Shown in pieces: positions 4,531 to 64,000 of a DNA stretch of 64,000 nt. The position numbers and the translations under genes are program-made. Each line of letters starts with the position of its first letter. Position 1 is the first letter of the stretch. The stretch spans positions 300,555 to 364,554 of the IMG/VR virus record IMGVR_UViG_3300042350_002797; one strand, written 5' to 3'. A model generated the notes under the pieces. The model worked only from the letters and a program-made list of their open reading frames with translations. It was not told the origin of the DNA and did no database searches.

Positions 4531-5285
4531 TGTATTTCCTCTAAAGTTGGAGCATATACTCCGATGTGCTGCACAGTAATGCTACTAGCTCGAACAGCAA
4601 ATGGAATAGATTTTTTTATACTACCTTGTTCTAGATATGCGTAAGTCAATGCGGCGAGAAAAGTATCTCCGGCGCCGCATACATCTGCTACTTCTATTTC
4701 AGGAGTAGAGTATATAACATCTTTATATTTTGCACCTCGAGAACCCAGAGTAATAATTAAATCTGTACATTCGCTCTCTGCTTCTTTATATTCTTTTTCG
4801 TTTATTTTAACAAAGATGCCTTCAAAATGTTGAAGATCAGTCATTTTAGTATCCATAAAAATAGGACCATTGAATTTTTGTTTAATTTTACTTACTACTG
4901 TATAATCTACAGACCCTTTAGCATAATCACTAATTACTACAGCATCATAGTTATTGATAGTTTTACAATCTATTTTTACCGGTCTACTGGTTTGATCTTG
5001 ATCTACTCTAATCAATTGCTGTTTACTTCTAATATCTATTAATCTAGTTTTAATACAAGTTTTAGCCCCATGTATAAAATCCACATGACATCCTAAACGT
5101 TGTAAATTTGTCTGTACATTAGCTGCCATACCTGGTTTAGTTTCTGAATATTTAAAATCAAAAACAGGTACAGGTCCTTCTGGACTTATTCTTGTAACGT
5201 CCCCATATTGATATTGATCAATACCATTATCCCCGATTAATAATATCTTGTATTGTTTTTGTAGTTGAGTGTTCTGTTCTATCAT
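4527..5285 (-). CDS. hldA: Heptose-7-phosphate kinase-like PfkB enzyme (HldE kinase domain, stand-alone)
   Basis: GDVTRISPEGPVPV, PGMAANV, ISDYAKG, DVCGAGDTF. Confidence 0.85.
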   Translation of the reverse strand: MIEQNTQLQKQYKILLIGDNGIDQYQYGDVTRISPEGPVPVFDFKYSETKPGMAANVQTNLQRLGCHVDFIHGAKTCIKTRLIDIRSKQQLIRVDQDQTSRPVKIDCKTINNYDAVVISDYAKGSVDYTVVSKIKQKFNGPIFMDTKMTDLQHFEGIFVKINEKEYKEAESECTDLIITLGSRGAKYKDVIYSTPEIEVADVCGAGDTFLAALTYAYLEQGSIKKSIPFAVRASSITVQHIGVYAPTLEEIQ

Positions 5286-5625
5286 AAAATATTACCTTAG
5301 GAACATGTTGTTCTCCTACAATACTACGACCTCGATAATCACTGCCTTTTACCATTATGTCTGGTTTGTATTCTTTAATAATGTTGATTAATTCTTCCTT
5401 AGAATCAAATAACATCACAGTGTCAACTGTTCTTAAATTATACAACATAAACCTTCTATCATCTTGATTATTAATTGGTCGAGTATTGCCTTTTAGTTCT
5501 TTAACTCTACGATCTGTATCGATACAAACTAATAATTGATCTCCTTGACTTCGTGCAAATTGCAATAGTTCCAAATGTCCTCTATGCAATATGTCAAATG
5601 TACCATTAACTATTACTTTGCTCAC
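5227..5625 (-). CDS. hldC: Heptose-1-phosphate nucleotidyltransferase-like (HldE domain II, stand-alone)
   Basis: NGTFDILHRGH (HxGH), LKGNTRPIN, KPDIMVKGSDY, STT. Confidence 0.85.
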   Translation of the reverse strand: MSKVIVNGTFDILHRGHLELLQFARSQGDQLLVCIDTDRRVKELKGNTRPINNQDDRRFMLYNLRTVDTVMLFDSKEELINIIKEYKPDIMVKGSDYRGRSIVGEQHVPKVIFYDRTEHSTTKTIQDIINRG

Positions 5626-5989
5626 TTTGACTATCTCCTGGAGCGATACGATAATTGTCTTCTACTGAATCAGCAGTGCTAACTTCGAAAATTATGCTGT
5701 TAGGTTGCAGTGCTTCTAATTGATGCGGCTGTAAAGGAGGATTGTGCCATACATCTCCTTCCTTAAGCAATTTTTCATGCATAGTGGCTGTTTTGGTATC
5801 TATATATCTAAGCATAAATTGTCCTGCATTTACAAACCAAGTTTCATCTTTTTCCTTATGAAAATGCATACTGAATTTAGCTCTAGCACGTTCAAACACC
5901 ATAAGTTTTCCACAATACTTGTCGTTAGTGGCCCAAATAATTTCATAGCCCCAACCTTTCTTAACCATACCTTCTAATCGTTGTGTCAT
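5606..5989 (-). CDS. Cupin sugar isomerase-like protein
   Basis: KGWGYE, SMHFHKEKDETW, PHQLEA, EVST cupin motifs. Confidence 0.7.
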   Translation of the reverse strand: MTQRLEGMVKKGWGYEIIWATNDKYCGKLMVFERARAKFSMHFHKEKDETWFVNAGQFMLRYIDTKTATMHEKLLKEGDVWHNPPLQPHQLEALQPNSIIFEVSTADSVEDNYRIAPGDSQSEQSNS

Positions 5990-8900
5990 TGTTTTTTCCT
6001 AAAATAGTAATCACCATCAGGCCCATTAGTACAAAATTGTCCAAGATTTTCAAAACCCAAAGATTCCATATAGGTTATTACTTCATCTTTTAAAGGAGCC
6101 CCTTTATTATATTCTACACTTTGACATTCTAAAATAACATGATTACAATTGGATAGAGTTTCTTGAGCACCTTTTAATACATCTAATTCAGCACCTTGCA
6201 CATCCATTTTGATTAAATCTGGTTTAGGTAATTTTTTTAAATTCACTACAGCATCTAAGGTAACAGTAGTATACTGTCGTCTATGACTGTCATTAAAGTA
6301 TTCATGTGCTTCAGCATTGACTTCTATGTTTTCTCTATAATAACTGTTACCGCCTGGATGATAAGTGTTTTGATAGAAATCTACTTGTCGACCAGTAGTG
6401 TCACTAAGAACTCCAATATGATATTGTAAATTTTGTTCTTTATAGATAAATTCACATTCTGGCATAGCTTCAAATACAACATATTCCGAGTCAGGCCAAA
6501 TACGTCGAGCTTCGTTGGTCCAGTGTAATACACATGCACCTATATCATAGACTACTTTAGGCTCTATAGATAAAGTTTTTAAATATTCTACATGCTGGTA
6601 TGGAATTAATCTTTGACTGCCTAATTCTCTTAATCGATCTGTATAATCTGTAATTTTGGGAATCGGAGCAACTTCTGGCGTAATGTTAAAATGTGTTTGA
6701 CCTATATGGCTACATACAATACTAGTATCTGCCCAAATAGTAAATCCTTTATCTTTAGCTTTGCGACAAAAATCTATATCTTCGCTAATTGTATGGCTAT
6801 GATCTAGTGCAGGATAATACATAAATTGTGGATATCCAATTGATCTAAACACTTCCGATTTAACTAGTACACAGCCAAACCCGCAAGCTGCTATTTCCAC
6901 TACGCCTCGATTTTGTATTTTATAGTAAGGTATATGATTCACACCACCAGTATTATTGTTTTCATATACTTCTAGTATTTGCTCAGGTTTACGTTGTCTG
7001 TAAATTCCAGTGACTACATCTTTGTTATGACTTAATAGTTTTTGTAATGTATCAGGAGCGAATGCCATATCTGCATCTACTGCCCAAAGATAATCGTATC
7101 CTTTGACTGCCCAATCTGCAATAAGATTGCGAACTTGATCTACTCTATATCCATAGAAGTACTGAAATGTGGTTTGGTAATCCTCGGGTATTATCTGATC
7201 GTAGATGCTCTTGAATGTCTCCGGCTCTATATTCCTGGCTGTGGGTATGGCTATTAGTATCTTTTTTTTTAACATAGTAGGTTTACTTATAATGTTTCTT
7301 GCTGTACGATTTTGTTCTTCTGCATTAACTTTGTAATCATTTAACGGATTGGTATCATTATAATTGTACACTATATCCTGTAAACATGCAACTTTATTTG
7401 GATCAGCTTGTTCAATTAGTGCATAAAATACTGCGCCATCTCCTCCTGCCCTGTACCATTCATTGTTTTCATTTTGAAATAAACTATCATCACAATTATC
7501 TATGAGATATTTCTTAAATGTTCTTAAATGAGTGTAAGGTAAAATCCAATTAAAATGGTGCTGTCTATATGTTTTGCTTTGTTTTACTTCTTCAGGATAT
7601 GGTTGGCTGATTAGGGGTATGTTATCAACCATACTCCAACAACTGCCATATGTAAATTCTAGATTGTCACTGTACAACGTATTGTAGTATGATAAAATAG
7701 TGTTGTCATTTATTAGGCTGTCGTCGCCATCTAGAATCATTATAATGCTGTTTTGTTCTAATGTTCTAAACAATTCTACTTGATTACGTACAGCACCTAG
7801 ATTTTGTTCATTAACAATCAGTGTTATCTTATTTTGTATATGTTGTGGTAAACTATCAATAAATCTATAGGCTACATCTACAGTATCATCTGTGCTAGCA
7901 TCATCTATTAAGTAATGATGATAGTTGTCATAGTCTTGACAGATTACACTTTCTATACAACGTTCAATGTAGTTTCTATTATTATAGAAAGTGCTGACTA
8001 TATTGATCTGCTGTTCTGTATTAGATTTATAGTTTTCTAACTCTACAACATTATGATAACGTCTATTATAAACTTTATGTACTCTACGATTTATTTTACT
8101 AACTTGACGATATTCTTCTAGGCTAAGATATAGTCCACAGGTTTTATAGAAAAACTGTTTCCATTGTAATGCCACAGTGTCCCATCCTGCTATAGGCTTG
8201 ACTACATTACAATAGTATTGTTTTTGTTGATGTAGATAAGTGTTATGATACGCCTGTACAGTTTGCTCGACAAATTTTTTAATTTGAGCTTCTCGATTTA
8301 TATCTGTGAAAAGAGAATTAGGTTCTATGGCATAATCAATAAGATAGCAACTACCTTCCAAGGCAACTTCTTCCAGCGCACCAAATCTACAAGTTATTAC
8401 TGGTGTGTTATAACATATACTTTCTAGTGTACTGATACCAAATGTTTCGGGAAAAGCAGCAGGATATATCATAAAGTTAGCAGCAGCTAATCTATCTGCT
8501 ATTTCACTCTGAGGAATGATACCTGTGAATTCTATATCTAGTTGTGCATTAGCAGGGTCATTGGCCATTTGACGCCAATCTAATTCTTGTTGGTCTGGTT
8601 GGCCATTTACTGTAAATCTATAATAGCCGCCTATTACAGTAAGTTTAGCTTCAGGTAATTGTTGTTTAACTCTAGGCCATATGTCTTTAACTAAAGGAAT
8701 CATACCTTTGGTTACACTGGCATTATAAACGAATCTGTTAGGATCTTTGGCTTTTATGTCGACTTCTTGTTTGTGCAAGTGAGCACCGTTGCGTGTGATA
8801 AAAGTTTTGTTTTTAAGAACTTCAAAGTTTCGTCTACGTCCGTGATGGCAATTTAGTACATAGGTCAAGTGCCAATCGCTGAGAGTAAAGATAGTAGTAA

Positions 8901-32185: not shown

Positions 32186-33364
32186 TTAACCTTGTGCTCT
32201 AACTGTTAAATCTAATAAAGAATTATATCCTAATCCTGTATCTACCATAATAAAAATACTCTCTGTACCATCGTCATAATAAAAGTCTCCAGGTATCAGA
32301 TCTTCAATAGTTAATCCGGCAGCAGCATCTGTATTTGTATACATCCTAGGAGCTTTAGTTGTTTGAATTGTTCCGTTAGGAAATACTAACCCTTCAGCTT
32401 TAATATATTGTAAGTTGCCTGAAGGAAGTGTAACTTTTAGAGCACCATCTATTGGATCAATACTAAGTACCGTGCCGCCAATATCTATAGAGTTACTTCC
32501 AACATAAATGGTTCCAAATCTATTTGTAGGGGATCCTAAATTTTGTAAACCATCAGTTGCCGGAATAATACTATATCCTGCATCTACAGTAATTGTATCT
32601 ATTCCATTACTGCTCATGCCGTCTACTATGCCAGCGCTACCTGTGTATCCAATATTGCCTTGGCTACCAGTATATCCTATGTCACCTTGACTACCAGTAA
32701 ATCCATTAGTTCCAGCACTGCCAGTAAATCCATTAGTTCCAGCACTACCTGTATATCCATTAGTTCCAGCACTACCAGTAAATCCATTAGTTCCAGCACT
32801 GCCAGTAAATCCATTAGTTCCAGCACTGCCAGTAAATCCATTAGTTCCAGCACTACCTGTAAATCCATTAGTTCCAGCACTGCCAGTAAATCCATTAGTT
32901 CCAGCACTGCCAGTAAATCCATTAGTTCCAGCACTACCTGTATATCCTGGAATTGTACTAGCAGATCCTGTGTATCCACTATTACCTTGACTACCAGTAA
33001 ACCCATTAGTTCCAGCACTACCTGTATATCCAAGACTACCTTGACTACCAGTAAATCCTCGTGGACCAGTTCCGTCGCCACCTGCAACAGAAAACCAATC
33101 AGGAGATGCTCCATCATCGTAATAAATGCTTAATTCATTATTATCAGGATTGTACCATATAGTGCCATTTGTTGGTTCAACTGGTTCTATGTTACTAATA
33201 GTAGTAACAGAATTACCTCCTATAGGATTTCCACCGGGTGTAGACCCGTCGCTGAGACGTAACTCTCCGGTTTCAATGTTGAAAAATAGATTACCTTCCT
33301 CACCAATAAATGATTCTATATCATTCTTGACAAGACCGGCTTTAATTTTACGGAAAAATGCCAC
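32186..33364 (-). CDS. Collagen-like fibre/structural protein
   Basis: GTG start; GELRLSDGSTPGG N-domain; GFTGSAGTN repeats. Confidence 0.8.
   Translation of the reverse strand: MAFFRKIKAGLVKNDIESFIGEEGNLFFNIETGELRLSDGSTPGGNPIGGNSVTTISNIEPVEPTNGTIWYNPDNNELSIYYDDGASPDWFSVAGGDGTGPRGFTGSQGSLGYTGSAGTNGFTGSQGNSGYTGSASTIPGYTGSAGTNGFTGSAGTNGFTGSAGTNGFTGSAGTNGFTGSAGTNGFTGSAGTNGFTGSAGTNGYTGSAGTNGFTGSAGTNGFTGSQGDIGYTGSQGNIGYTGSAGIVDGMSSNGIDTITVDAGYSIIPATDGLQNLGSPTNRFGTIYVGSNSIDIGGTVLSIDPIDGALKVTLPSGNLQYIKAEGLVFPNGTIQTTKAPRMYTNTDAAAGLTIEDLIPGDFYYDDGTESIFIMVDTGLGYNSLLDLTVRAQG
32703..32945 (-). repeat. 27-bp tandem repeat x9 (G[FY]TGSAGTN)
   Basis: Near-identical ccattagttccagcactgccagtaaat units. Confidence 0.9.
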
Positions 33365-49641: not shown

Positions 49642-49717
49642 GCACTGGTAGCTCAACGGTTAGAGCCGGAGTCTCTAAAGCTCAAGGTTATGGGTTCGAA
49701 TCCCATTCGGTGCACCA
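49642..49717 (+). tRNA. Amber suppressor tRNA, anticodon CTA
   Basis: 76-nt cloverleaf: GCACTGG/TCGGTGC acceptor, GCTC/GAGC D-stem, anticodon loop CT-CTA-AA (CTA at 49675-77 = positions 34-36), ATGGG-TTCGAAT-CCCAT T-arm, A73, encoded CCA. Confidence 0.85.
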
Positions 49718-55532: not shown

Positions 55533-55635
55533 CAAAATCGTGCAGATTCGCAAAAATACAACACTTTCTTTTTTGGTTGACATTTGATGTAGATAGTGTA
55601 TAATAGTGGCTTAGTTAGTTAATTAAGGAGCTGAG

Positions 55636-55875
55636 ATGGAGCTTGCAGAGATTATAACAGTCAACTATAGTGTAGACTACGATATGCTATACGACGAGGG
55701 CAAGAGCCCAGCAGAATGCGCTGAACTGTTTACTGACTTGTTTGAGCGTACTATGAGCAATCTACTACGCGATACTGAGCGTGATAACGTGGGTGGTGTC
55801 TATATATACTATCGCGCAGGCGAACGTGTAGCATGGTTTGATTACGAGAACATGTGGGGCGGGCGTTACGAATAA
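55636..55875 (+). CDS. Early hypothetical protein
   Basis: Promoter + AAGGAG. Confidence 0.75.
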   Translation: MELAEIITVNYSVDYDMLYDEGKSPAECAELFTDLFERTMSNLLRDTERDNVGGVYIYYRAGERVAWFDYENMWGGRYE

Positions 55876-55938
55876 AACGGTTGACAAATTGGGCAGAAGA
55901 CTGTATTATACACGAACACTAACGAAAAGGAGCTAAAG

Positions 55939-56295
55939 ATGGAGCTAACTCAAAACTTTGTTAATCATGCCGTCCTTGAAGCTAAGGAAGCGGCTTATGC
56001 GGCTGCGGATGACTTCTTCCGTCAGCGTCTGAATGGTGTGGATCAGTATGCCTGTGGCTTTGCTTGGGTTAACATCTGGGAGCACAATGGCGTCAAGATT
56101 AAGGGTAACACCAAGTTGGGCAAGATGCTTAAGGCAGCTGGTGTGCGTCAGGACTATACTAAGGCGTTTCAGATCTGGAATCCCAGTGGTTTGAGCGTAC
56201 AGAACGTGGACTGCAAGGAAGTGGGTGCGCAGGCTGCGGCTGATGTATTGAAGAAGTATGGATTCACAGCCTATGCAGGATCGCGTCTGGATTGA
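55939..56295 (+). CDS. Early hypothetical protein
   Basis: Promoter + AAGGAG; ACGFAWV...SRLD. Confidence 0.8.
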   Translation: MELTQNFVNHAVLEAKEAAYAAADDFFRQRLNGVDQYACGFAWVNIWEHNGVKIKGNTKLGKMLKAAGVRQDYTKAFQIWNPSGLSVQNVDCKEVGAQAAADVLKKYGFTAYAGSRLD

Positions 56296-56386
56296 TGTTG
56301 TTTTTACGCAACAGGGTGGATTTTGGTTGACAAGTTCACCCTGTGGTGCTATACTATTGAAACTGTGTAATTAACTAGGAGCTGAT

Positions 56387-56617
56387 ATGCGTGAAGCAAC
56401 TAATCGTATTTTGGAGCTGGTGGAAGAGGGCATGTTGGACCGTGATACTGTTATCATGGCCTGCTTGAAGTACATGAGCGAGGACGATGTAGCAGACATG
56501 GCTCACGCCAACGAGTTCTTCTTGGATGAGGACGAGGAGGACGAAGAGGAAGACGAGGAGTGGGATGGACAGCCTGATGAGGCACAGGAGTGGTATGACT
56601 TTGATCCGGAATGCTAA
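56387..56617 (+). CDS. Acidic early protein
   Basis: CLKYMSEDDV; D/E-rich tail with DGQPDEAQEWYDFDP. Confidence 0.8.
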   Translation: MREATNRILELVEEGMLDRDTVIMACLKYMSEDDVADMAHANEFFLDEDEEDEEEDEEWDGQPDEAQEWYDFDPEC

Positions 56618-56681
56618 TTTCGGTTGACAGGGTGTAGAGTTGGTGTTATACTAGCTCTACACTAACAGAACAGGAGCAGAC

Positions 56682-57059
56682 ATGCGATACTATGACGAAC
56701 TGGCCCGTTACGAGCGTGAGGGCTTTGAAATCATTGTGGATAAGACCTATGAAGACATACATCCCCAAGACTGTTTTGACGACTCCTGTTACGATATCCC
56801 ACAGATCTGCCGTGACATCGACATGGGCAAATACGAATGGTTCATGCTCCGAGTCCGGGCTTTGGTTGAAGGGCACGAGTTGGGATCGGCCTACCTCGGG
56901 GGATGCTTATACGAAGACGCCCGCGAAGTCCTTAGTGACGGGACAGCCGAGGACCAAATCTACTTGGCTCTAGAAGAAGCCAAGCGGGCAGTATGGCCCT
57001 TGATGCGTCGATTGCAGGGCATTAATGAGACTATGGAACTGGAGGCTGTTCGTGGATAA
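56682..57059 (+). CDS. Early hypothetical protein
   Basis: Cassette promoter + AGGAG; GSAYLGGCLY. Confidence 0.8.
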   Translation: MRYYDELARYEREGFEIIVDKTYEDIHPQDCFDDSCYDIPQICRDIDMGKYEWFMLRVRALVEGHELGSAYLGGCLYEDAREVLSDGTAEDQIYLALEEAKRAVWPLMRRLQGINETMELEAVRG

Positions 57060-57210
57060 TTTTTTGGTTGACATTGAGTACGATCCTGTGTATAATACTT
57101 ACATGGCTTGCTACTCCAATGGTGTGGTAATCCAGCTAGGAGCCACTACGTATCAGGATGCAGTACTAGAGGCTGATTCAATTGAACCTTATGACTATGA
57201 AGGAGCGTGA
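57052..57210 (+). CDS. Small acidic protein containing an embedded promoter
   Basis: GGAGG + GTG; VDNFLVDIEYDPVYNTY...AVLEAD. Confidence 0.55.
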   Translation: MDNFLVDIEYDPVYNTYMACYSNGVVIQLGATTYQDAVLEADSIEPYDYEGA

Positions 57211-57211
57211 A

Positions 57212-57502
57212 ATGAATATTCAAACTATTAATACCGCTATCATCAACGGTGGTTGGACCAATGCGGAACTCATGAGCATGACTGATGCTATTCGCTTTGC
57301 TCGTAAACGTTTAACAGAGCGTAGTAAGGCTGAACTGGCTGTGGGTGATGCAGTGACCTTTGACAGTACTAAACAGGGTCGGGTGGTTCGTGGCACTGTG
57401 CTTAAGATTGCTATCAAATATGTCACTGTACGGGAAACTTCAGGCGGCCTGTGGAAAGTGCCTGCTAACATGTTGAGCAAGGTTGAGGATGTTTACGCTT
57501 AA
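57212..57502 (+). CDS. Early protein with SH3/KOW-like C-terminus
   Basis: AAGGAG; VGDAVTF...GTVLKI..KYVTV...WKVPANML. Confidence 0.7.
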   Translation: MNIQTINTAIINGGWTNAELMSMTDAIRFARKRLTERSKAELAVGDAVTFDSTKQGRVVRGTVLKIAIKYVTVRETSGGLWKVPANMLSKVEDVYA

Positions 57503-57710
57503 TAGAGTATTAGAGTGGGGAGCCTGCATTGTTACCCTTATAGGTGCAGGTTTTACTGCTTACAATGTATACCCCTTGAACATTATGTTCTTGGAGTTTG
57601 GTGCATTAATTTATATCTTTTGGAGCATACGTATACGCAAGCTCAGTTTGATTATAATTAATGTGACGCTGTTTGCAATCTACTTACCAGGAGTTTTAAG
57701 ACACTTATGA
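57489..57710 (+). CDS. Small multi-pass membrane protein
   Basis: Three hydrophobic segments; YPLN. Confidence 0.65.
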   Translation: MFTLNRVLEWGACIVTLIGAGFTAYNVYPLNIMFLEFGALIYIFWSIRIRKLSLIIINVTLFAIYLPGVLRHL

Positions 57711-57865
57711 TTCAACAATACGAAGCGTGGTACAAAGACCCTAGAACTGGTGCTATGATCAAGGTCTACACCCAAGCAGATAATGTATCAGCAGCCAAAA
57801 GCTTGCTAGAAGGACAATATGGTGCTGCCAACATCTGGGGCGTAGGCGCAGTTTAACAATTTAAC

Positions 57866-57895
57866 AACCGTTGTAGAAATACAACGGTTTTTTTT
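57866..57895 (+). terminator. Intrinsic terminator overlapping an upstream promoter element
   Basis: aaccgttgta-gaaa-tacaacggtt followed by a T-run. Confidence 0.75.
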
Positions 57896-57959
57896 CGGTT
57901 GACTTTTGGCTAGGGCGGTGCTATACTATTGAAACTGTCAAAAACAACTAGGAGCTGAG

Positions 57960-58205
57960 ATGTCAAACTATCCAAATATGAGTTACTGCATGTTCCAAAA
58001 CACCCAAATGGCCATGGACCAGCTGATTACTTTTATGCAAGAAGCTGACCAGGATGACATGCTGGACATGAGCAAGGACGAGCTAAGGGCCATGCGTGAG
58101 CTGTTTGGTTATTGCGAACAGTTCATGAAGTTGGCAGAAGAGTTTGATGACCGTAGACAGCAGCTCCTGGATGCCTGCGAAGATGACGAAATGGAGGAGT
58201 TCTAA
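57960..58205 (+). CDS. Early hypothetical protein
   Basis: Cassette; NMSYCMFQNT. Confidence 0.75.
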   Translation: MSNYPNMSYCMFQNTQMAMDQLITFMQEADQDDMLDMSKDELRAMRELFGYCEQFMKLAEEFDDRRQQLLDACEDDEMEEF

Positions 58206-58468
58206 TGTATACCGTTGAAATCTACAAGAAGGATGCTCGTACCAAATCAGGCGAGCGTAGGGTACACAAGGAAGACTACAAGACAGACAATCGGTCCATG
58301 CTGGAGCATACTGTGCAGACCACATGGTTAGCACGGGATGGCTACCGCTACGAGATACACGAGACCTATGTTGTGCGTAAGAACGCCTTGAATGGGCAGG
58401 AGTTTGAAGAACGTTACGACGTGCCTTACTACTGCTCACCACGTAGCGAAACTTATTGGAGTGCTTAA
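58205..58468 (+). CDS. Early hypothetical protein
   Basis: GGAGGAG; PYYCSPRSETYWS. Confidence 0.75.
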   Translation: MYTVEIYKKDARTKSGERRVHKEDYKTDNRSMLEHTVQTTWLARDGYRYEIHETYVVRKNALNGQEFEERYDVPYYCSPRSETYWSA

Positions 58469-58668
58469 TGTTAACAGCTAAACAACAATGGTTATTTGAG
58501 CAACTGGGTGAGAGCCCAGCAGACGAGCATGAGGTTAGATTGCGTCATCGTCTATGCGTGGAGCAGTACGGAGCTGTTAAAGATTTCACAAGATGGCTGA
58601 CCAAGCGTCTGTATCGCAAGTGGGAGCTAGATCGTAGCAGAACAACAACACCTTATCTAGGAGACTAA
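58468..58668 (+). CDS. Hypothetical protein
   Basis: Coupled ORF. Confidence 0.55.
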   Translation: MLTAKQQWLFEQLGESPADEHEVRLRHRLCVEQYGAVKDFTRWLTKRLYRKWELDRSRTTTPYLGD

Positions 58669-58850
58669 TATGTTAAAAATAGCAATAGGTATGGGCAGCA
58701 TTGTTATGATGATTGCAACACTAATTACTGCTTTAGTAATAACCCGAATGTGCCTTAGTGCTGCTCATCACTTCCTGCTGAAATAGGTTGACATTTGGGC
58801 ACAGAGGTGCTATTATATACACACTTAGACAACAACAGAAGGAGAGCGAA

Positions 58851-59294
58851 ATGGGTACAAGATCATTGACGTTTGTTTACAGCGAAAACGATAAGCCTAT
58901 TGTCAACTTGTATAGACAGTATGATGGCTATCCCACAGGCCATGGTGCTGAGCTTGCAGAGTTCCTCAGTGAGTTTGCTGCTATTACTAATGGCATTGCT
59001 GTGGGTGAGACACGTCGTACTGCCAATGGCATGGGCTGCTTGGCTGCTCAATTAGTAGCACACTTCAAAAACAGCGTGGGCGGGTTTTACATCCACAGCG
59101 TTGACTCCAAGGAGTGTGGACAGGACTATGAGTACCACGTGTATCAGGGTGGTGCTAATGGCGAGCTGTGGGTACGTGTTAAGGATCGTGGCTGCAATAT
59201 GTTCGGCCTGACACTGAGCGACATGGACAAAAGTATTTTTGATGGTCCTGTTAGCCATTTTGTAACATTCTGTAGCGAAAAAACAACAGCATAA
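58851..59294 (+). CDS. Early hypothetical protein
   Basis: AAGGAG; MGTRS...YRQYDGYP.GHG...NGMGCLAAQ. Confidence 0.8.
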   Translation: MGTRSLTFVYSENDKPIVNLYRQYDGYPTGHGAELAEFLSEFAAITNGIAVGETRRTANGMGCLAAQLVAHFKNSVGGFYIHSVDSKECGQDYEYHVYQGGANGELWVRVKDRGCNMFGLTLSDMDKSIFDGPVSHFVTFCSEKTTA

Positions 59295-59358
59295 ATTGGT
59301 TGACAAAGTGTAGGGCTGGTGTTATACTAGCTCTACACTAACAAAACAGGAGCAGACA

Positions 59359-59619
59359 ATGTCTAGATTTGCAATTGAACAGTTTGTAGAGCGTGAGAAC
59401 AAGTTTGGTGCCATCTTTGGTTCCAAGCCCTTGAGCTTACTGAACAAGGCGGATCGTCAGCGTATTGCAGACAAGATTGATGCGGCACTGAGCCCAGAGA
59501 ACTTGACCTGCGATGGTGAACTGCCTAGAGCAGAGGTGCAGAAGCGTTACAACTTCCTCACTAAGGCTGCAAAAGAACTGAAGAGTATTGACCCTGCTGT
59601 TGAAATGTACGGATTCTAA
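59359..59619 (+). CDS. Early hypothetical protein
   Basis: Cassette; LSPENLTCDGE. Confidence 0.8.
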   Translation: MSRFAIEQFVERENKFGAIFGSKPLSLLNKADRQRIADKIDAALSPENLTCDGELPRAEVQKRYNFLTKAAKELKSIDPAVEMYGF

Positions 59620-59629
59620 GGAGACTGAT

Positions 59630-60196
59630 ATGCCTAACTGGTGCTCAAATAGTGTTGTGCTCAAGCACAAAGACCCTACATTCGTTGCTCGTGCTCGTGA
59701 GGCATTTAACGAAGGTACCCTACTAAATGAATTCATTCCTGTCCCTAAAGACCTCAAGGAGACTGTCAGTGGGTTCATGGGTGATACAGAAGAGCAGAAG
59801 CAACTAGAGATTCAGACTGCATACAATATCAAGAACTATGGATATGGCAACTGGTATGACTTCTGCGTAAACGAGTGGGGTACCAAATGGGATGTAGGTG
59901 CCGATGGTCAGCCGGCACAGGACATTGAAGGCGGCCTAATGTTGAACTTTGATTCAGCGTGGGCACCACCGATCAGAGCCTATGAGAAGATGGTAAGTAT
60001 GGGCTTCGAAGTAGAAGCATTATATTACGAATCTGGCATGGGTTTTGTAGGCGAATGGATCGATGGCGAAGACTATTGCTATCAGATCGAAGGCAACAGT
60101 GAGTGGGTGCGTGAGAACATACCTGAGCACTTAGACGAAGCCTTCGCTATCAGTGAAGGTATGGAACAATGGGAAGAGGAAAATGAAGAAAGTTAA
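59630..60196 (+). CDS. DUF1281/YubB-like ferredoxin-fold protein
   Basis: MPNWCSN...WYDFCVNEWGTKWD...FDSAWAPP...YYESGMGFVG. Confidence 0.7.
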   Translation: MPNWCSNSVVLKHKDPTFVARAREAFNEGTLLNEFIPVPKDLKETVSGFMGDTEEQKQLEIQTAYNIKNYGYGNWYDFCVNEWGTKWDVGADGQPAQDIEGGLMLNFDSAWAPPIRAYEKMVSMGFEVEALYYESGMGFVGEWIDGEDYCYQIEGNSEWVRENIPEHLDEAFAISEGMEQWEEENEES

Positions 60197-60280
60197 ACCA
60201 GTAGTACCAAAGATACGTCCTAAGGAACCTAATTGGGACTTTTCAGGAATCGAAGCAGTGATTAGACTATGGGCAAAGGG

Positions 60281-60550
60281 ATGAGCAAACTACAACTACT
60301 TCACAGACAGTGGGTAGTGTTTGATGCCCACAATGAGAACCATCGTAGATATTATGCAGACTTTTGCAAATATGCTACTTGGGGACGCTGCCCAGTCCGT
60401 TTCATAATGGACGATGACAGTAACGATTTAATAACAATGATTCAACGAAAGTTAGTAGAATATTATGTTACGGAGGAGTTTCCTGTAGTATCAAAGCCTA
60501 AAATCAAAACGGATAGATATATGGTTGACTCAGCACCAAAAACCGCTTGA
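60281..60550 (+). CDS. Hypothetical protein
   Basis: FDAHNENHR...WGRCPVRF. Confidence 0.65.
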   Translation: MSKLQLLHRQWVVFDAHNENHRRYYADFCKYATWGRCPVRFIMDDDSNDLITMIQRKLVEYYVTEEFPVVSKPKIKTDRYMVDSAPKTA

Positions 60551-60634
60551 CAAAGTATTCGAACTAGCGTATAATTCGAATTGTAGTAGCAATATTACTT
60601 TGTATTTTTATTAACACACACATGGAGATTTTGA

Positions 60635-60985
60635 ATGACTAACCAAACTTTTACTGTAGCTGGTACTTCTAAACACAAAGGCGAATTCAAAGTTCGTTTC
60701 GCTAATGATTTGATGCGTACCAAGAATCTTACCAAGTCAGGACACACTGACATTACACTAGTTGAGCTGCCACAAGCTATGTTGAAGCTGGATGCTATCA
60801 AGTACATCGCAACTCTGGATGAGTTTGATAATGTTGGTGCAAAGACTGCGATCATGGACTACTTGGATCGCAAGGACGAAGCACCTAAAGCTAAGGGTCC
60901 GGCTGTCAAAGCATCAGGCCCCGCTGCTAAGAAGGTTACCAAGGCTAAGGCAGCAGTGACCGCCGACGAAGACGCACCATTTTAA
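60635..60985 (+). CDS. Hypothetical protein with K/A-rich tail
   Basis: Promoter at 60547; GGAG; VAGTS...KVRFAND. Confidence 0.75.
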   Translation: MTNQTFTVAGTSKHKGEFKVRFANDLMRTKNLTKSGHTDITLVELPQAMLKLDAIKYIATLDEFDNVGAKTAIMDYLDRKDEAPKAKGPAVKASGPAAKKVTKAKAAVTADEDAPF

Positions 60986-61024
60986 TCGCGTGTGAGGCCT
61001 CCGTATCGTATAAATAAAATCACT

Positions 61025-61201
61025 ATGCGATACGGAGTTTCTTTTTCAAATGACTACTTTGAGGGTTCAGTGGTAATACGTGACTTTCAAAGTGAACCCA
61101 AGGGCCGCGTGTTGGCCATCATACCTAGAGATAATAGACACGAAGCAGAACAAGAAGCACAGAGGATCTGCGACTTACTTAATAAATCCTTAGCACAATG
61201 A
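61025..61201 (+). CDS. Hypothetical protein
   Basis: TATAAATA upstream; AQRICDLLN. Confidence 0.55.
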   Translation: MRYGVSFSNDYFEGSVVIRDFQSEPKGRVLAIIPRDNRHEAEQEAQRICDLLNKSLAQ

Positions 61202-61383
61202 TTTTCGAACTATATGAGGTCTGGACCGAAGACTCTCTCGGACATCAAGAACTAGTAGATACCACCAGCAGTATCGTCGAAGCTAGAATTATTGCAGAAC
61301 AAGCACTTGACGATGGTGCAGAATATGTTATAATATATAGAGAAACAGAAGACGGCGAATTAGAAGTAGTAGAAGAAATGTAA
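61198..61383 (+). CDS. Acidic hypothetical protein
   Basis: Coupled ORF. Confidence 0.6.
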   Translation: MIFELYEVWTEDSLGHQELVDTTSSIVEARIIAEQALDDGAEYVIIYRETEDGELEVVEEM

Positions 61384-61384
61384 T

Positions 61385-61469
61385 GCCCGGGTGGTGGAAT
61401 GGTAGACACAAGGGACTTAAAATCCCTCGCCCATAAGGCGTGCCGGTTCGAGTCCGGCTCCGGGTACCA
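61385..61469 (+). tRNA. tRNA-Leu (TAA)
   Basis: Cloverleaf with long variable arm, loop CT-TAA-AA, CCA end. Confidence 0.92.
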
Positions 61470-61473
61470 ATAT

Positions 61474-61550
61474 CTGACCATAGCTCAATCGGATAGAGCA
61501 ACAGCCTTCTAAGCTGTAGGTTGGGGGTTCGATTCCCTCTGGTCAGGCCA
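61474..61550 (+). tRNA. tRNA-Arg (TCT)
   Basis: CTGACCA/TGGTCAG acceptor, loop CT-TCT-AA, CCA end. Confidence 0.92.
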
Positions 61551-61554
61551 AGTA

Positions 61555-61632
<78 letters not shown>

Positions 61633-61737
61633 CTCATCTAGGTTAGTAAGCACTTACTTACACACTAAAATTTTGGTTGACTTTTTTGCGCAAACCTGTA
61701 TAATACAAACACTTAAACAAAACAGCAGGAGCGTAAA

Positions 61738-62037
61738 ATGCGTATTAAAAAAGCAACTAAAGCAGACGTAGCAACTATTGTACAAATTATGCAAGCAGAC
61801 CTTGCAAAATATGTAAAACTAACTAAAACAGCGTATGCAGACAAAATTGCAGACAGCACTTACATAGCAGAATTGCACTACGACGATATTGTACACAATT
61901 ACAATGCACTAGTGCAATTTATGCAAGACAAAGACACTGTAAAATTGTGCGACACAATTATGCGACAGGACACTGCACCACGGGAGTACTTTTACAAAAC
62001 TATACATTTTTGCACAGACAATTATATGTACTATTAA
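61738..62037 (+). CDS. Early protein in the TC-free island
   Basis: Cassette promoter + AGGAG; QDTAPRE. Confidence 0.8.
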   Translation: MRIKKATKADVATIVQIMQADLAKYVKLTKTAYADKIADSTYIAELHYDDIVHNYNALVQFMQDKDTVKLCDTIMRQDTAPREYFYKTIHFCTDNYMYY

Positions 62038-62109
62038 TTTTTTGGTTGACAAAGTGTGTGTGCTATGCTATAGTACACACACTTAAACAGTAATTGTAAG
62101 GAGCGTAAA

Positions 62110-62292
62110 ATGCAAACAGTTATTAAACAGCAACTTTTTAATAAATTAGCAGAAGTACAAGACCTGCTGAAACAAGCTACCTGCGACAGCGAAAGTTACG
62201 CACAAAGTTTACAGGATAACATTGGGTGGGCAGCTGAGCTAGATATTGCGCTGCGTACACTTACAGACAATGTAGATTATTACGTGGATTAA
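62110..62292 (+). CDS. Early protein in the TC-free island
   Basis: Cassette promoter + AAGGAG. Confidence 0.75.
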   Translation: MQTVIKQQLFNKLAEVQDLLKQATCDSESYAQSLQDNIGWAAELDIALRTLTDNVDYYVD

Positions 62293-62359
62293 TTTTGGTT
62301 GACAATGTAGTGTATGTGTGCTATAATGTACACATACACTAACAAAACAGGAGCACACA

Positions 62360-62524
62360 ATGACCGAAGCTAAAATTGAGCGGCTAGAGCGTACACTGTG
62401 GGAGCTGGAGCAGCTGGCTAGTGAGCTGTTTGACATGGGCTACATTACACAGGGCAATGCGATTTATGGCGTGGTAGAAACTGTAGACGCTGAGCTTGCG
62501 GACATTGTAGAAGGGAGAGAGTAA
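62360..62524 (+). CDS. Early acidic protein in the TC-free island (not in ORF track)
   Basis: AGGAG + ATG; MTEAKIERLERTLWELEQL... Confidence 0.7.
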   Translation: MTEAKIERLERTLWELEQLASELFDMGYITQGNAIYGVVETVDAELADIVEGRE

Positions 62525-62757
62525 TGTTATTGAAACAACACGTTAACGAACTAGTAAACATGGATGCTGCTGGCCTTAGCAAAATTACAAGGCATACAGG
62601 CTACAAGGATGCTAATTTCGCAACCTGCGAGTTTGTGGGCATTACTAACGGCGGTGAGTTTGCGTACAGGGCCAGCTACTACGAGGATGGCAGAGAACAG
62701 TTTACAAAATTGTATGTGTGGCGAGACACTGCTGGGAACTTTGTAGCAGACTACTAA
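62524..62757 (+). CDS. Early hypothetical protein
   Basis: Coupled; FVGITNGGEF.Y. Confidence 0.75.
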   Translation: MLLKQHVNELVNMDAAGLSKITRHTGYKDANFATCEFVGITNGGEFAYRASYYEDGREQFTKLYVWRDTAGNFVADY

Positions 62758-62822
62758 AAACGGTTGACATTTTGGACAGTTAGTGTATAATAGCTGCATA
62801 CGTTAACAAAACAGGAGCTAAA

Positions 62823-63065
62823 ATGTTTGCACAAGCTAAAAACAACACTGCTTACGCTAAATTGTCCTTTTGCAAAAAGCTAAAACTGTTTAAAATGATC
62901 GTTGCTTTTAACGTAACACAGCGTAACGCTAAGGGCAAATTGTTGTTTCCTGTACAACAAAAGTGCAACTATGTTAGTGGTCACTTTGCTTTAGAGGAGC
63001 TTGCTAAACAGTTAACAGTCGCGGAGCAGCACCTGCGTACAAATAAAATTGTAATTGCAGAATAA
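62823..63065 (+). CDS. Basic early protein
   Basis: Cassette; contains no Asp. Confidence 0.7.
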   Translation: MFAQAKNNTAYAKLSFCKKLKLFKMIVAFNVTQRNAKGKLLFPVQQKCNYVSGHFALEELAKQLTVAEQHLRTNKIVIAE

Positions 63066-63132
63066 AATTGGTTGACAAGCTAGTGTATGTGTGCTATAAT
63101 GTACACATACACTAACAAAACAGGAGCGAAAA

Positions 63133-63384
63133 ATGTTTAAATTAGATGAGCGTAGTGAAGTGTACTTCCAGGGCAAGACCTACACCACATGGCACGGTAG
63201 TCCATTTGATCGTGGTAGCGCAGACAGCTACTATGGTCGTGGTGCTAAGGCACACTGGTATCCCGAGGGTACTGGACGTGGTGAAGCAATTACTGAAGAG
63301 CGTATGAGCTTGACAGAGATTGAAGCATACTACGCAGGCTATGATCACAATGAGCGGTTTGGTGACAAGAAGAATTGGTATTAA
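63133..63384 (+). CDS. Early hypothetical protein
   Basis: Cassette; HGSPFDRGSADSYYGR. Confidence 0.8.
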   Translation: MFKLDERSEVYFQGKTYTTWHGSPFDRGSADSYYGRGAKAHWYPEGTGRGEAITEERMSLTEIEAYYAGYDHNERFGDKKNWY

Positions 63385-63387
63385 GAT

Positions 63388-63789
63388 TATGGTGAGGAAG
63401 CAAGGTTGGGGTTTGGTCACTGTATAGTGGCTGTGCGCTGAAACAACCCGTAATGCGAATATCCTTGTGGTAAGCAGAGAGTTGGCGTGGCGACCAACCA
63501 CCATACAAGTTCCGGTTACTACTTTCCTGAAAGTAGCGGGTGGCACCGAGATTGGCCCGGTGAGCTAGGACACCGTTAGAGCAATGCAGAGCTGGGCCCT
63601 AGATATGCGGACACAACCGCTAGCGAATATGCTCAAACAAATGTGGACAGGGCAACAACTCCAGCATAGGGGCGATCCGTGGAAAGACGTGGCCTAAGCA
63701 ATTATACTAAAACACATTTCGAGCGGTGTCCCGGTATCGGCCAGCCCGCCCCAAAGTAGCTGTCTAGGGTAGTGTGTTTTGATATAATT
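63388..63789 (+). ncRNA. Candidate cluster of structured ncRNAs
   Basis: ~400-nt GC-richer block with no + strand gene and nested stems (tatggtg/caccata, caagg/ccttg, ggtcact/agtggct, gttgg/ccaac, ctacttt/aaagtag, caccg/cggtg, aattata..aaaacaca/tgtgtttt..tataatt). Confidence 0.55.
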
Positions 63790-63851
63790 CGGTTGACAAC
63801 TCAGACTCTTGGTGCTATAATATACACATACTGAAACAACAGGAGCGTGAT

Positions 63852-64000
63852 ATGGGATACAAGGTACTGAACACTGTGGACAATATGCGTGACAACTATG
63901 GTCCACGCCCTGGGCTAGAAGGTCCGTACAATTTCAACGGTAGGGTTCTGTACTACGATCCAAAGGAAGGCCAGTACTATGACCCACGCACAGACTTCTA
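63852..64000 (+). CDS. Early hypothetical protein, 3'-truncated
   Basis: Cassette promoter + AGGAG; GLEGPY...GRVLYYDPKEG.YYDP.TDF. Confidence 0.75.
   Translation, partial: MGYKVLNTVDNMRDNYGPRPGLEGPYNFNGRVLYYDPKEGQYYDPRTDF

What the first reader, a model, noticed from the sequence alone, without database searches (positions are those of the whole stretch)
61639..62864. ~1-kb early-gene island with no 5'-TC-3' dinucleotide on the + strand
Seen, reading line by line: there is no TC on the + strand from 61639 to 62617 (979 nt), and only one (62618) up to 62864. CT is plentiful in the same stretch and TC is common elsewhere. My rough estimate from base composition is about 40 expected. Within the TC-free stretch Ser is AGY, Phe is TTT and Ile is ATT/ATA. 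The complement GA is also largely confined to obligatory Asp/Glu codons in 61738..62292, and the 62823 protein has no Asp, suggesting pressure on both strands. The island covers four strongly promoted early genes and their promoters. Established TC/GA-context chemistry includes DarT2 ADP-ribosylation (TNTC/TCTC), TC-preferring deaminases (DddA), phosphorothioation at GAAC/GTTC or GATC, and preQ0 modification at GA in phage CAjan. Inference: these genes must work before, or in spite of, a TC/GA-directed DNA modification or a UC-directed RNase. That makes them prime candidates for the matching counter-defence, or genes kept free of the phage's own base modification so host RNAP can read them.
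Basis: partly seen in the sequence, partly recalled or inferred. Interest (0 to 1): 0.85.

Follow-up and report, generated by a model that had tools for sequence, protein, structure and literature searches.

The report
Early phage genes lacking TC dinucleotides
In a lake jumbo phage and its relatives, the early genes just after a tRNA cluster are written so that C almost never follows T or C on the coding strand, which looks like evasion of an unidentified enzyme or factor that reads that two-letter motif on single-stranded RNA or DNA.

Summary
No TC occurs from 61638 to 62617. This is the longest gap of any dinucleotide in the 364.5-kb genome (next TC gaps: 247 nt, adjacent, then 185 nt). CC is also about 4-fold depleted, so the rule is "no C after a pyrimidine" on the sense strand.

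The depletion holds under amino-acid-preserving resampling (expected 17-24 TC, observed 1), across codon boundaries, and in promoters and UTRs. It overrides a local preference for C-ending codons and removes proline and TCN-serine.

Nine diverged relatives carry the same island (about 0.9-4.3 kb). It starts just after the tRNA cluster, apart from two lineages noted in the report, and gene content varies, so the property is positional and selected. In one relative it follows the sense strand of minus-strand genes. T4 and the nearest cultured relative lack it.

Pressure on the opposite strand is weak in this window.

Best reading: target-site avoidance against a 5'-YC-3'-specific, single-strand-directed activity. 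A UC-cutting RNase is my first guess. Attack on non-template ssDNA and Rho are rivals. The agent is unidentified.

The parts
61385..61632 (+). tRNA cluster (Leu-UAA, Arg-UCU, Met-CAU) that forms the 5' boundary of the island
   Evidence: ARAGORN and Rfam. In the window and 6 of the 8 relatives held with the tRNA cluster, the TC-free stretch begins within about 45 nt after the last tRNA. Exceptions are L045 and L044.
61638..62617 (+). Core island: 980 nt with no TC and only 7 CC on the + (sense) strand
   Evidence: TC 0 against 43.6 expected; CC 7 against 30.6; AC o/e 1.59; GC o/e 1.84.
62618..62947 (+). Tapering 3' edge of the island. There are 3 TC in 61638-62947, against 47 expected.
   Evidence: The first TC (62618) is a Phe TTC codon of gene D, shared by several lineages at the same codon.
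61677..61704 (+). Promoter P_A (TTGACT, 16-nt spacer, TATAAT)
   Evidence: 11 of 12 consensus matches; conserved in L012.
61738..62037 (+). Gene A, 99 aa, no family match; 0 TC
   Evidence: Homologs occur only in this phage clade (63-99% identity).
62046..62074 (+). Promoter P_B
   Evidence: 11 of 12.
62110..62292 (+). Gene B, 60 aa, acidic and probably helical (my reading of the sequence); 0 TC
62299..62327 (+). Promoter P_C
   Evidence: 12 of 12.
62360..62524 (+). Gene C, 54 aa, acidic; 0 TC
62524..62757 (+). Gene D, 77 aa; 1 TC. Confident predicted fold (2 helices plus a 4-stranded sheet) with no PDB match.
62764..62791 (+). Promoter P_E
   Evidence: 12 of 12.
62823..63065 (+). Gene E, 80 aa, at the island edge. 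It has 5 TC here, 3 in L045, and 1 in L046, where it lies inside the island. No Asp.

Best explanation
Shown. The island is a selection-maintained zone with no target sites. A variable array of small early genes, each preceded by a promoter, lies directly downstream of the phage tRNA cluster. Its sense strand is written without 5'-YC-3'. TC is essentially forbidden. CC is tolerated about 5 times less than normal, and in the larger islands mostly where proline is needed.

Inferred. This makes the sense-strand nucleic acid invisible to an activity that needs a pyrimidine followed by C (U/T preferred over C at the first position). That nucleic acid is either the mRNA or the non-template DNA strand displaced during transcription. 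The activity acts with one-hit kinetics on single strands.

My committed guess is a UC-directed endoribonuclease that is active at the onset of infection. It could be a host abortive-infection, toxin or CRISPR-ancillary RNase, or less likely a phage shut-off RNase. Island mRNAs would stay translatable while other transcripts are cut. Those other transcripts can be made again once an island product has neutralised the RNase.

The confidence given for this entry is for the RNase.
For: 1. Not chance. The gap is unique in the genome. It is significant under amino-acid-preserving resampling.

2. Acts on nucleic acid, not on codons or tRNAs.
- Cross-codon T|C is 3, against about 83 flank-scaled; C|C is 12, against about 63.
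- Intergenic TC is 0/239 nt here and 0/939 nt in L046, against 6.3 and 18.4 expected.

3. Selection is strong.
- NTC codons are 2 of 212, while flanks use them 27-47% of the time.
- C-ending codons after a purine are used more than in flanks (GAC 77% against 47%; GGC 80% against 50%).
- Pro is 0.27x and TCN-Ser is 1 of 56.

4. Positional and conserved.
- Island lengths with observed and expected TC: L012, 3 TC against 48 expected; L023, 3/66; L046, 4343 nt, 5/175; L047, 4/72; L048, 3/95; L049, 7/56.
- L045 has TC-free runs of 1758 and 717 nt. L011 has no TC from the contig start to 1084.
- Gene sets differ. Extra genes in L011 and L023 are also TC-free or TC-poor.
- Gene E's TC count depends on whether it lies inside the island.

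5. Follows the sense strand. In L084, minus-strand genes are YC-free on their own sense strand. The avoidable-site ratio is 0.01-0.18 on the sense strand and 0.63-0.81 on the antisense strand.

6. One-hit character. TCA, TCG and TCT are 0 of 269 expected over five islands.

7. Not a C-to-T conversion footprint. Base composition is unchanged. The lost NYC codons are redistributed over T/A/G-ending codons as flank usage predicts (0.384 observed, 0.412 predicted, p=0.18). A C>T model predicts 0.531 and is rejected (p=3e-13).

8. Locality argues for reversible damage. Flanking early genes have equally strong promoters but normal TC. Avoidance limited to a few genes therefore only makes sense if damage elsewhere can be made good later. 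That holds for RNA.
Against: - No YC-specific bacterial RNase is known to me, and none was identified here. The host is unknown.
- The island proteins have no recognisable function.
- In relatives, a widespread ~200-aa gene family and its non-coding flanks are YC-free on both strands. Family-wide Asp, Glu, Gly, Pro and Trp are each under 1%. An RNA-level reader explains this only if the antisense strand is also transcribed. A DNA-level reader explains it more simply.
- Antisense depletion is weak but significant in L045 and L046.
- Transcripts from island promoters should read into TC-containing genes downstream, because there are no terminators.
- Metatranscriptome contigs barely cover the island, so its expression is not shown.
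Confidence: 0.4

Rival explanations
1. Attack on the non-template DNA strand. A host single-strand-DNA-specific enzyme reaches the strand displaced in transcription bubbles or R-loops of the earliest genes. Candidates are a DarT-like ADP-ribosyltransferase with a relaxed N-T-C motif, a TC/CC-preferring ssDNA cytosine deaminase, or a T4 EndoIV-like dC-specific nuclease. The island removes its sites from that strand.
For: - The strand rule is the same as for RNA: the sense strand is the non-template strand.
- The both-strand YC-free 200-aa gene family and its non-coding flanks in relatives are more naturally a DNA-level effect.
- The weak antisense depletion in L045 and L046 also fits.
- Non-template-strand ADP-ribosylation near a promoter almost abolishes transcription in vitro (PMC12170906).
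- From my own knowledge, T4 endonuclease IV cuts ssDNA 5' of dC and prefers T before it, and APOBEC3-type enzymes prefer TC or CC.
- T4-like phages are known targets of DarTG and carry erasers for it (PMC11825919).
Against: - Irreversible DNA damage in the equally transcribed flanking early genes would still kill the genome. Only a reversible modification fits the locality.
- Known DarT2 motifs do not fit: VNTC is purged and TNT/TTT are not depleted.
- A T-modifying enzyme does not explain the CC and proline loss.
- There is no C>T footprint.
- No denB homolog was found in the phage.
Confidence: 0.27
2. Rho evasion. The primary RNA-binding clefts of the termination factor Rho bind 5'-YC dinucleotides. 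A transcript without YC cannot load Rho, so RNA polymerase crosses the first kilobases after the untranslated tRNA genes whether or not ribosomes follow.
For: - Both UC and CC are depleted, C after a purine is kept, and the effect is on the RNA-sense strand.
- The YC specificity of Rho's clefts is established (PMC12360218).
- The island starts right after an untranslated tRNA operon.
- Rho is nearly universal and silences foreign DNA (cited in PMC12360218).
Against: - Rho binds cooperatively over about 80 nt, so a few YC should be harmless. Yet TCA, TCG and TCT are 0 of 269 expected.
- CC, which should be at least as good a ligand as UC, is tolerated more than TC.
- C content and the C/G ratio are not lowered.
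- Flanking early genes manage with normal YC.
- The genes have strong Shine-Dalgarno sites and should be translated.
- Purging the antisense strand of the 200-aa gene would favour antisense read-through.
Confidence: 0.15
3. Self-modification-free zone. The phage modifies its own DNA in a TC/GA or YC context, and the earliest genes are kept free of modifiable sites so that host RNA polymerase can read them.
For: GCC is depleted (1 against 9.2 expected).
Against: - The complete genome has no TGT/DpdA, QueC or thymidylate-synthase-family homolog.
- ACC and CCC are depleted about as much as GCC.
- Flanking early genes with normal TC use the same promoters.
- Other modified phages are transcribed by host polymerase without such islands (my own knowledge).
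Confidence: 0.05
4. Purely mutational footprint. Examples are UV-type or deaminase-type YC>YT changes on the non-transcribed strand of very highly transcribed genes, without selection for avoidance.
For: TT is mildly enriched (o/e 1.23-1.37). Known YC>YT processes are strand-asymmetric in transcribed genes (my own knowledge).
Against: - C content is unchanged.
- Ser is recoded to AGY, which C>T changes cannot reach.
- Lost codons are not converted to T-ending ones.
- Island edges are sharp beside equally promoted genes.
- Open reading frames are intact in all lineages.
Confidence: 0.04

Closest known systems
Restriction-site avoidance in phage genomes, including early-entering regions and the one-orientation EcoP15I sites of T7 (my own knowledge)
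   Same: Sequence motifs recognised by a hostile enzyme are purged by selection. The purge can be regional and, for Type III sites, strand-biased.
   Different: Here the motif is a dinucleotide, not a 4-8 bp site. The purge is confined to the sense strand of 1-4 kb, includes UTRs, and reshapes amino-acid composition. No double-strand or palindromic logic fits.
mRNAs without toxin cleavage sites, such as ACA-less mRNAs that stay translatable when MazF is active (my own knowledge; reviews PMC7781912 and PMC5408214 appeared in the search but were not read)
   Same: An mRNA lacking the cleavage motif is selectively expressed while an RNase cuts the rest. This is the logic proposed here.
   Different: No natural kilobase-scale, multi-gene, conserved example is known to me. 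The motif here is UC/CC. ACA is the most enriched trinucleotide in the island, so MazF(ACA) itself is not the agent.
Rho utilisation sites (YC-rich, C>G RNA bound by Rho's primary binding clefts; PMC12360218)
   Same: The dinucleotide alphabet (5'-YC) and the strand (RNA sense) are exactly those that are depleted.
   Different: The island would be an anti-rut. Known Rho evasion uses antitermination factors or inhibitors such as Psu, not sequence purging. The all-or-none TC purge exceeds what cooperative binding should require.
APOBEC3 TC-depletion footprints in papilloma- and polyomaviruses; T4 endonuclease IV (5'-T^C on ssDNA) (my own knowledge)
   Same: TC (and CC) is the target context of single-strand-DNA-specific enzymes. 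Viral genomes can carry a depletion footprint.
   Different: Those footprints are mild (roughly 20-30%) and genome-wide. Here depletion is about 50-fold, local and without a C>T signature. No denB homolog was found.
DarTG defence and phage anti-DarT factors (PMC12170906, PMC11825919)
   Same: It is a single-strand-DNA-specific, short-motif modification that blocks transcription and replication. T4-like phages counter it with early proteins.
   Different: The TNT core is not avoided, VNTC is avoided as completely as TNTC, and CC depletion is unexplained.

Membership tests
DarT2 (TNTC / TTT-TCT / TTTW) target avoidance | Depletion restricted to the DarT motif, with T required at positions 1 and 3 | tested here: not met
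   VNTC is 0/27.5, 0/48.8 and 2/122 observed/expected. TNT is 68/61.7, 128/111.7 and 287/256.7. TTT is enriched. Motif rule from PMC12170906.
Dnd/Ssp phosphorothioation motif avoidance (GAAC/GTTC, GATC, CCA) | The double-strand motif is absent in either orientation | tested here: not met
   GAAC is present 1, 5 and 14 times in three islands. One CCA remains in the window island.
DpdA 7-deazaguanine (preQ0/dG+) self-modification at GA/GGC | The phage encodes DpdA (TGT family) and preQ0 synthesis genes | tested here: not met
   PF01702 and PF06508 gave no match in the genome, which CheckV rates 100% complete. Controls matched in 14/14 and 13/14 genomes.
DpdA 7-deazaguanine (preQ0/dG+) self-modification at GA/GGC | On this strand only TC and GCC should be avoided | tested here: not met
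   Ratios to flank expectation are ACC 0.22, CCC 0.33 and GCC 0.15.
DddA-type dsDNA TC deaminase or any double-strand/palindromic target | Symmetric depletion on both strands where coding allows | tested here: not met
   Avoidable sense-strand YC ratio is 0.18, 0.01 and 0.05. Avoidable antisense ratio is 0.81, 0.63 and 0.79.
Deaminase/UV mutational footprint (YC>YT) | Loss of C, gain of T, and lost NYC codons replaced by NYT | tested here: not met
   C is 17.7% against 18.4% in flanks. The fraction of T-ending codons is 0.384, against 0.531 predicted; p=3e-13.
Rho-binding-site (rut) avoidance | Depletion of 5'-YC on the RNA-sense strand | tested here: met
   TC o/e is 0-0.08 and CC o/e 0.12-0.35 in four island segments from three lineages (window, L045, L046). 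The effect follows the sense strand.
Rho-binding-site (rut) avoidance | Rho-dependent termination is restored when YC is restored; threshold-type tolerance of isolated YC | not testable with these tools
Cleavage-site-free mRNA (MazF/ACA-less type logic) | Motif absent from coding and untranslated parts of the sense strand only | tested here: met
Cleavage-site-free mRNA (MazF/ACA-less type logic) | A cognate RNase with that specificity exists in the host or phage | not testable with these tools
   The host is unknown. Literature searches found no UC-specific bacterial RNase.
T4 endonuclease IV (denB)-type self weapon | The phage encodes a denB homolog and a cytosine replacement pathway | tested here: not met
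   No match to T4 DenB at E<=1 (no positive control, and small proteins diverge quickly). No ThyA/dCMP-hydroxymethylase family member.

The most novel reading that the evidence does not exclude
The island is the genomic shadow of an undescribed 5'-YC-3'-specific, single-strand-directed immune enzyme (an RNase or an ssDNA modifier/nuclease) of freshwater bacteria, or of a phage shut-off weapon with that specificity. The variable cassette genes inside it, and the both-strand YC-free 200-aa family in relatives, would be the matching first-wave counter-defence genes. Scanning for sense-strand dinucleotide-free runs would then be a general way to find both.
Probability: 0.5. Interest if true: 0.92.

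Novelty: new variant of a known kind. Interest (0 to 1): 0.86.

Why it matters
If the reading is right, a sequence statistic alone marks the genes a jumbo phage needs before anything else works. It also gives the exact specificity (pyrimidine followed by C, on a single strand) of the activity they must survive. That makes the unknown defence, or the role of Rho, directly testable with synonymous TC-restored alleles.

It also shows that a nucleotide-level constraint can strip proline from the encoded proteins. In a related family of more than 500 homologs, Asp, Glu, Gly, Pro and Trp are nearly absent, yet the protein still has a confidently predicted fold (pLDDT 92). This is an unusual natural experiment in reduced amino-acid alphabets.

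Finally, the same scan could be run over all viral metagenomes to find similar islands and the genes inside them.

Tried and rejected
- DNA similarity to deposited phages: only tRNA hits.
- Family searches for proteins A-F and their neighbours: Pfam and PHROGs gave nothing above noise.
- Protein D: the AlphaFold model is confident but has no PDB neighbour. It is not Rof-like.
- ESM atlas for A and C: all hits scored below 0.9.
- Stop-codon recoding, prompted by the amber-suppressor-like tRNA: the standard code already gives long ORFs over about 85% of the genome.
- Phage-encoded agents: no TGT/DpdA, QueC, ThyA-family or T4 DenB homolog.
- Rfam: nothing but tRNAs.
- Metatranscriptome contigs: too sparse over the island to show timing or cleavage.
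- Exact-peptide scans for the extra genes of L023 and L011: no further loci.
- Other low-YC stretches in this genome: these are collagen-like GxTGSAGTN repeats of a fibre-like protein and an ordinary protein, and are unrelated.
- Symmetric DNA-level pressure plus unequal coding cost as the cause of strand bias: rejected by the avoidable-site test.
- PAM avoidance, primase sites, UV lesions on the template strand and codon/tRNA effects: rejected by reasoning. They predict the wrong strand, symmetry, or no cross-codon effect.
- The L045 flank intergenic figure was mis-specified and is not used.
Full report
CONTEXT. The window is the last 64 kb of a single 364,554-bp IMG/VR virus contig, rated 100% complete by CheckV. 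The contig ends overlap, so the assembly closes on itself. Its DNA polymerase is 45-49% identical to those of Sinorhizobium phage Phosso, Agrobacterium phage Atu_ph07 and the Rak2-like coliphages. It is therefore a distant T4-superfamily jumbo phage. Near-identical DNA occurs in at least 14 lake-water metagenome runs. Most genes lie on the minus strand. A block of small plus-strand genes runs from about window 41,000 across the contig junction to about genome position 3,000. Within it, near-consensus sigma-70 promoters (11-12 of 12 matches) occur from 55577 to 63793.

THE OBSERVATION.
- TC occurs at 61637, 62618 and 62865. The 981-nt gap is the longest gap of any dinucleotide in the genome. 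The next TC gaps are 247 nt (adjacent) and 185 nt.
- In 1-kb windows, TC observed/expected is 0.02 against a genome mean of 0.93 (sd 0.15).
- The same scan of phage T4 and of Phosso finds no TC- or GA-free stretch of this kind.
C content is unchanged (17.7% against 18.4%), because AC (o/e 1.59) and GC (1.84) are raised. In the island C follows A 99 times, G 67 times, C 7 times and T never.
- The rule is therefore "no C after a pyrimidine" on the plus strand. GA is only mildly low (o/e 0.70; genome mean 0.91, sd 0.16).

- Resampling synonymous codons for proteins A-D gives 17 expected TC with genome-wide usage and 24 with local early-gene usage. One is observed. The Poisson P is about 5e-7 to 1e-9 (my calculation from those expectations).
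- I used a dynamic-programming minimum to separate unavoidable from avoidable sites. Avoidable YC is 8 against 43.5 expected in the window, 1 against 72.7 in L045, and 9 against 165.5 in L046.
- The non-coding parts of the island are purged too: 0 TC in 239 nt (6.3 expected), and 0 in 939 nt in L046 (18.4 expected).
- Cross-codon T|C is 3 against about 83 flank-scaled, and C|C is 12 against about 63. This excludes a codon or tRNA explanation.
- The purge overrides translational preference. NTC codons are 2 of 212, although flanks use them 27-47% of the time. Meanwhile C-ending codons after a purine are used more than in the flanks (GAC 77% against 47%, GGC 80% against 50%, AGC 80% against 54%).
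- Serine is AGY in 55 of 56 cases. Proline is 0.27x and histidine 0.49x the flank frequency. Asp is 1.25x and Glu 0.94x.

HOMOLOGS.
- Loci were found through proteins A, D and F. They span about 56-92% identity in protein D. Nine diverged lineages were examined at the DNA level (L011, L012, L023, L044-L049).
- All show the island on the sense strand. In most it begins within about 45 nt after the last tRNA of the same Leu/Arg/Met cluster, whatever the tRNA order.
- Observed and expected TC are: L012 3/48, L023 3/66, L046 5/175 (4343 nt), L047 4/72, L048 3/95, L049 7/56.
- In L011 no TC occurs from the contig start to 1084.
- L045 has one TC-normal gene between the tRNAs and the island. It then has TC-free runs of 1758 and 717 nt and a 1600-nt run without CC. 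L044 has only a weak island of about 0.9 kb.
- Gene content varies. L023 has an extra 107-aa gene with a single TC. L011 has a different 80-aa gene with none. L046 carries about 13 island genes, of which only some are shared with the window.
- Gene E has 5 TC in the window, 3 in L045, and 1 in L046, where it lies inside the island.
- A 39%-identical homolog of D in an unrelated high-GC phage has normal TC.
- The property therefore belongs to the position, not to particular genes, and is continually re-imposed.
- Over five islands, TCA, TCG and TCT are 0 against 269 expected. TCC is 4 against 57, sitting at X-Pro junctions or in a serine codon. CCN is 0.12-0.33 of expectation with no strong dependence on the preceding base.

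STRAND RULE.
- In L084, a 198-kb contig of a related phage, plus-strand genes at 4632-6507 lack TC and CC. Adjacent minus-strand genes (6953-7586) lack GA and GG on the plus strand, so they are YC-free on their own sense strand.
- Asymmetric coding cost could in principle create such a bias under a symmetric DNA-level pressure. The avoidable-site test rejects this. Synonymously avoidable antisense sites remain at 0.63-0.81 of expectation, against 0.01-0.18 for sense sites.
- The antisense depletion is not significant in the window (-1.4 SD). It is about -3 SD in L045 and L046.

SELECTION RATHER THAN EDITING.
- Base composition is essentially that of the flanks.
- In codon families that lost their C-ending member, the remaining T/A/G-ending codons keep flank proportions (0.384 T-ending against 0.412 predicted, p=0.18). 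A C>T conversion model predicts 0.531 and is rejected (p=3e-13).
- Ser TCN cannot reach AGY by C>T changes.
- This excludes a recent hypermutation footprint. It does not exclude a very old equilibrium.

- DarT2 needs T at positions 1 and 3 (PMC12170906). TC outside TNTC is purged just as completely, and TNT/TTT are not depleted.
- Dnd motifs: GAAC persists.
- preQ0/dG+: the genome has no TGT/DpdA, QueC or ThyA-family gene, and GCC is not singled out among CC contexts.
- DddA-like dsDNA deamination predicts symmetry, which is not seen.
- SsdA-type ssDNA deamination is context-independent (PMC12494967).
- No T4 DenB homolog was found.

WHAT THE PATTERN IMPLIES (inference).
- A reader of 5'-YC-3', with T/U preferred over C at the first position, acts on the sense-strand nucleic acid. 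That is either the mRNA or the non-template DNA strand.
- The all-or-none loss of TC suggests that a single site is harmful, as with cleavage or a blocking adduct. Cooperative binding would tolerate isolated sites.
- Flanking early genes carry equally strong promoters but normal TC. Local avoidance only helps if damage elsewhere is reversible, as with mRNAs that can be re-made or DNA adducts that a phage enzyme can later erase.
- This favours a UC-directed endoribonuclease (my first choice, about 0.4) or a reversible ssDNA modification.
- It disfavours irreversible DNA cleavage or deamination.
- It disfavours Rho, although the YC specificity of Rho's primary binding clefts (PMC12360218) matches the alphabet exactly.

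A COMPLICATION FROM RELATIVES.
- L048 (10830-12136) and L084 (about 7600-8680) carry a compact promoter-gene-terminator unit that lacks YC on both strands. In L048, TC is 0/66, CC 0/55, GA 3/79 and GG 1/30 (observed/expected).
- Its promoters use TTGCNT instead of TTGACA. One of its two genes has no Shine-Dalgarno sequence.
- Its ~200-aa protein has more than 500 homologs at 60-96% identity on contigs up to 343 kb. Family-wide composition is Asp 0.8%, Glu 0.46%, Gly 0.24%, Pro 0.24% and Trp 0%.
- It folds confidently (pLDDT 91.8) with no PDB neighbour and has no Pfam or PHROG match.
- It was not found in the window's genome.
- A both-strand purge is easier to explain at the DNA level, or by overlapping antisense transcription. 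This is why I keep the ssDNA rival at 0.27.

LIMITS. The host, the agent and the functions of A-E are unknown. Metatranscriptome contigs are too sparse to show island expression. The lineages are related, so pooled counts are not independent.

VERDICT. The specific named chemistries are not supported, and the both-strand claim is weak in this window. I know of no described case of a strand-specific, dinucleotide-free, positionally defined gene island, and the literature searches found none. I class it as a new variant of target-site avoidance, of high interest.

Noticed in passing
window 63508-63705 (ORF-free, GC-rich stretch 63385-63790 between gene F and the next promoter): A conserved, structured non-coding RNA of about 200 nt. 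Eight base pairs show compensatory changes among 7 lineages. A 148-nt piece (63522-63669) flanked by adapters reaches depth 85 with no mismatch in one lake metatranscriptome. There is no Rfam match. Its position recalls the stable small RNAs of the T4 tRNA region.
   Followed up: partly
L048 10830-12136; L084 about 7600-8680; proteins P0083-P0202: In relatives only, a compact gene unit is YC-free on both strands. Its ~200-aa protein family (more than 500 homologs) almost entirely lacks Asp, Glu, Gly, Pro and Trp, yet it has a confidently predicted fold with no PDB neighbour.
   Followed up: partly
L084 6953-7586 (minus-strand genes): Minus-strand genes next to that unit are free of GA and GG on the plus strand. 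They are therefore YC-free on their own sense strand, which shows that the rule follows gene orientation.
   Followed up: yes
window 49642-49717: A tRNA with anticodon CTA (amber-reading; ARAGORN labels it Pyl). Yet the standard genetic code already gives long ORFs over about 85% of the genome, so there is no sign of genome-wide recoding.
   Followed up: partly
genome positions 1-131 and window 63870-64000: The contig start repeats the window's end, so the assembly closes on itself. It begins with a short inverted copy of the following sequence, probably an assembly artefact. IMG/VR nevertheless classes the record as linear.
   Followed up: partly
window 32186-33364 (minus strand): A 392-aa protein with about 15 collagen-like GxTGSAGTN repeats. 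It causes long GA-, GG- and CG-free runs on the plus strand. This is a repeat effect, unrelated to the island.
   Followed up: yes
genome 134119-134724 (outside the window): A 605-nt stretch without CC inside a plus-strand 367-aa gene. It is the second most surprising dinucleotide gap in the genome, with an approximate score of 5.8.
   Followed up: no
L044 5024-5236: In one relative, the first gene after the tRNA cluster has a weak precomputed hit to the RNA-polymerase-binding domain of SutA (PF20661).
   Followed up: no
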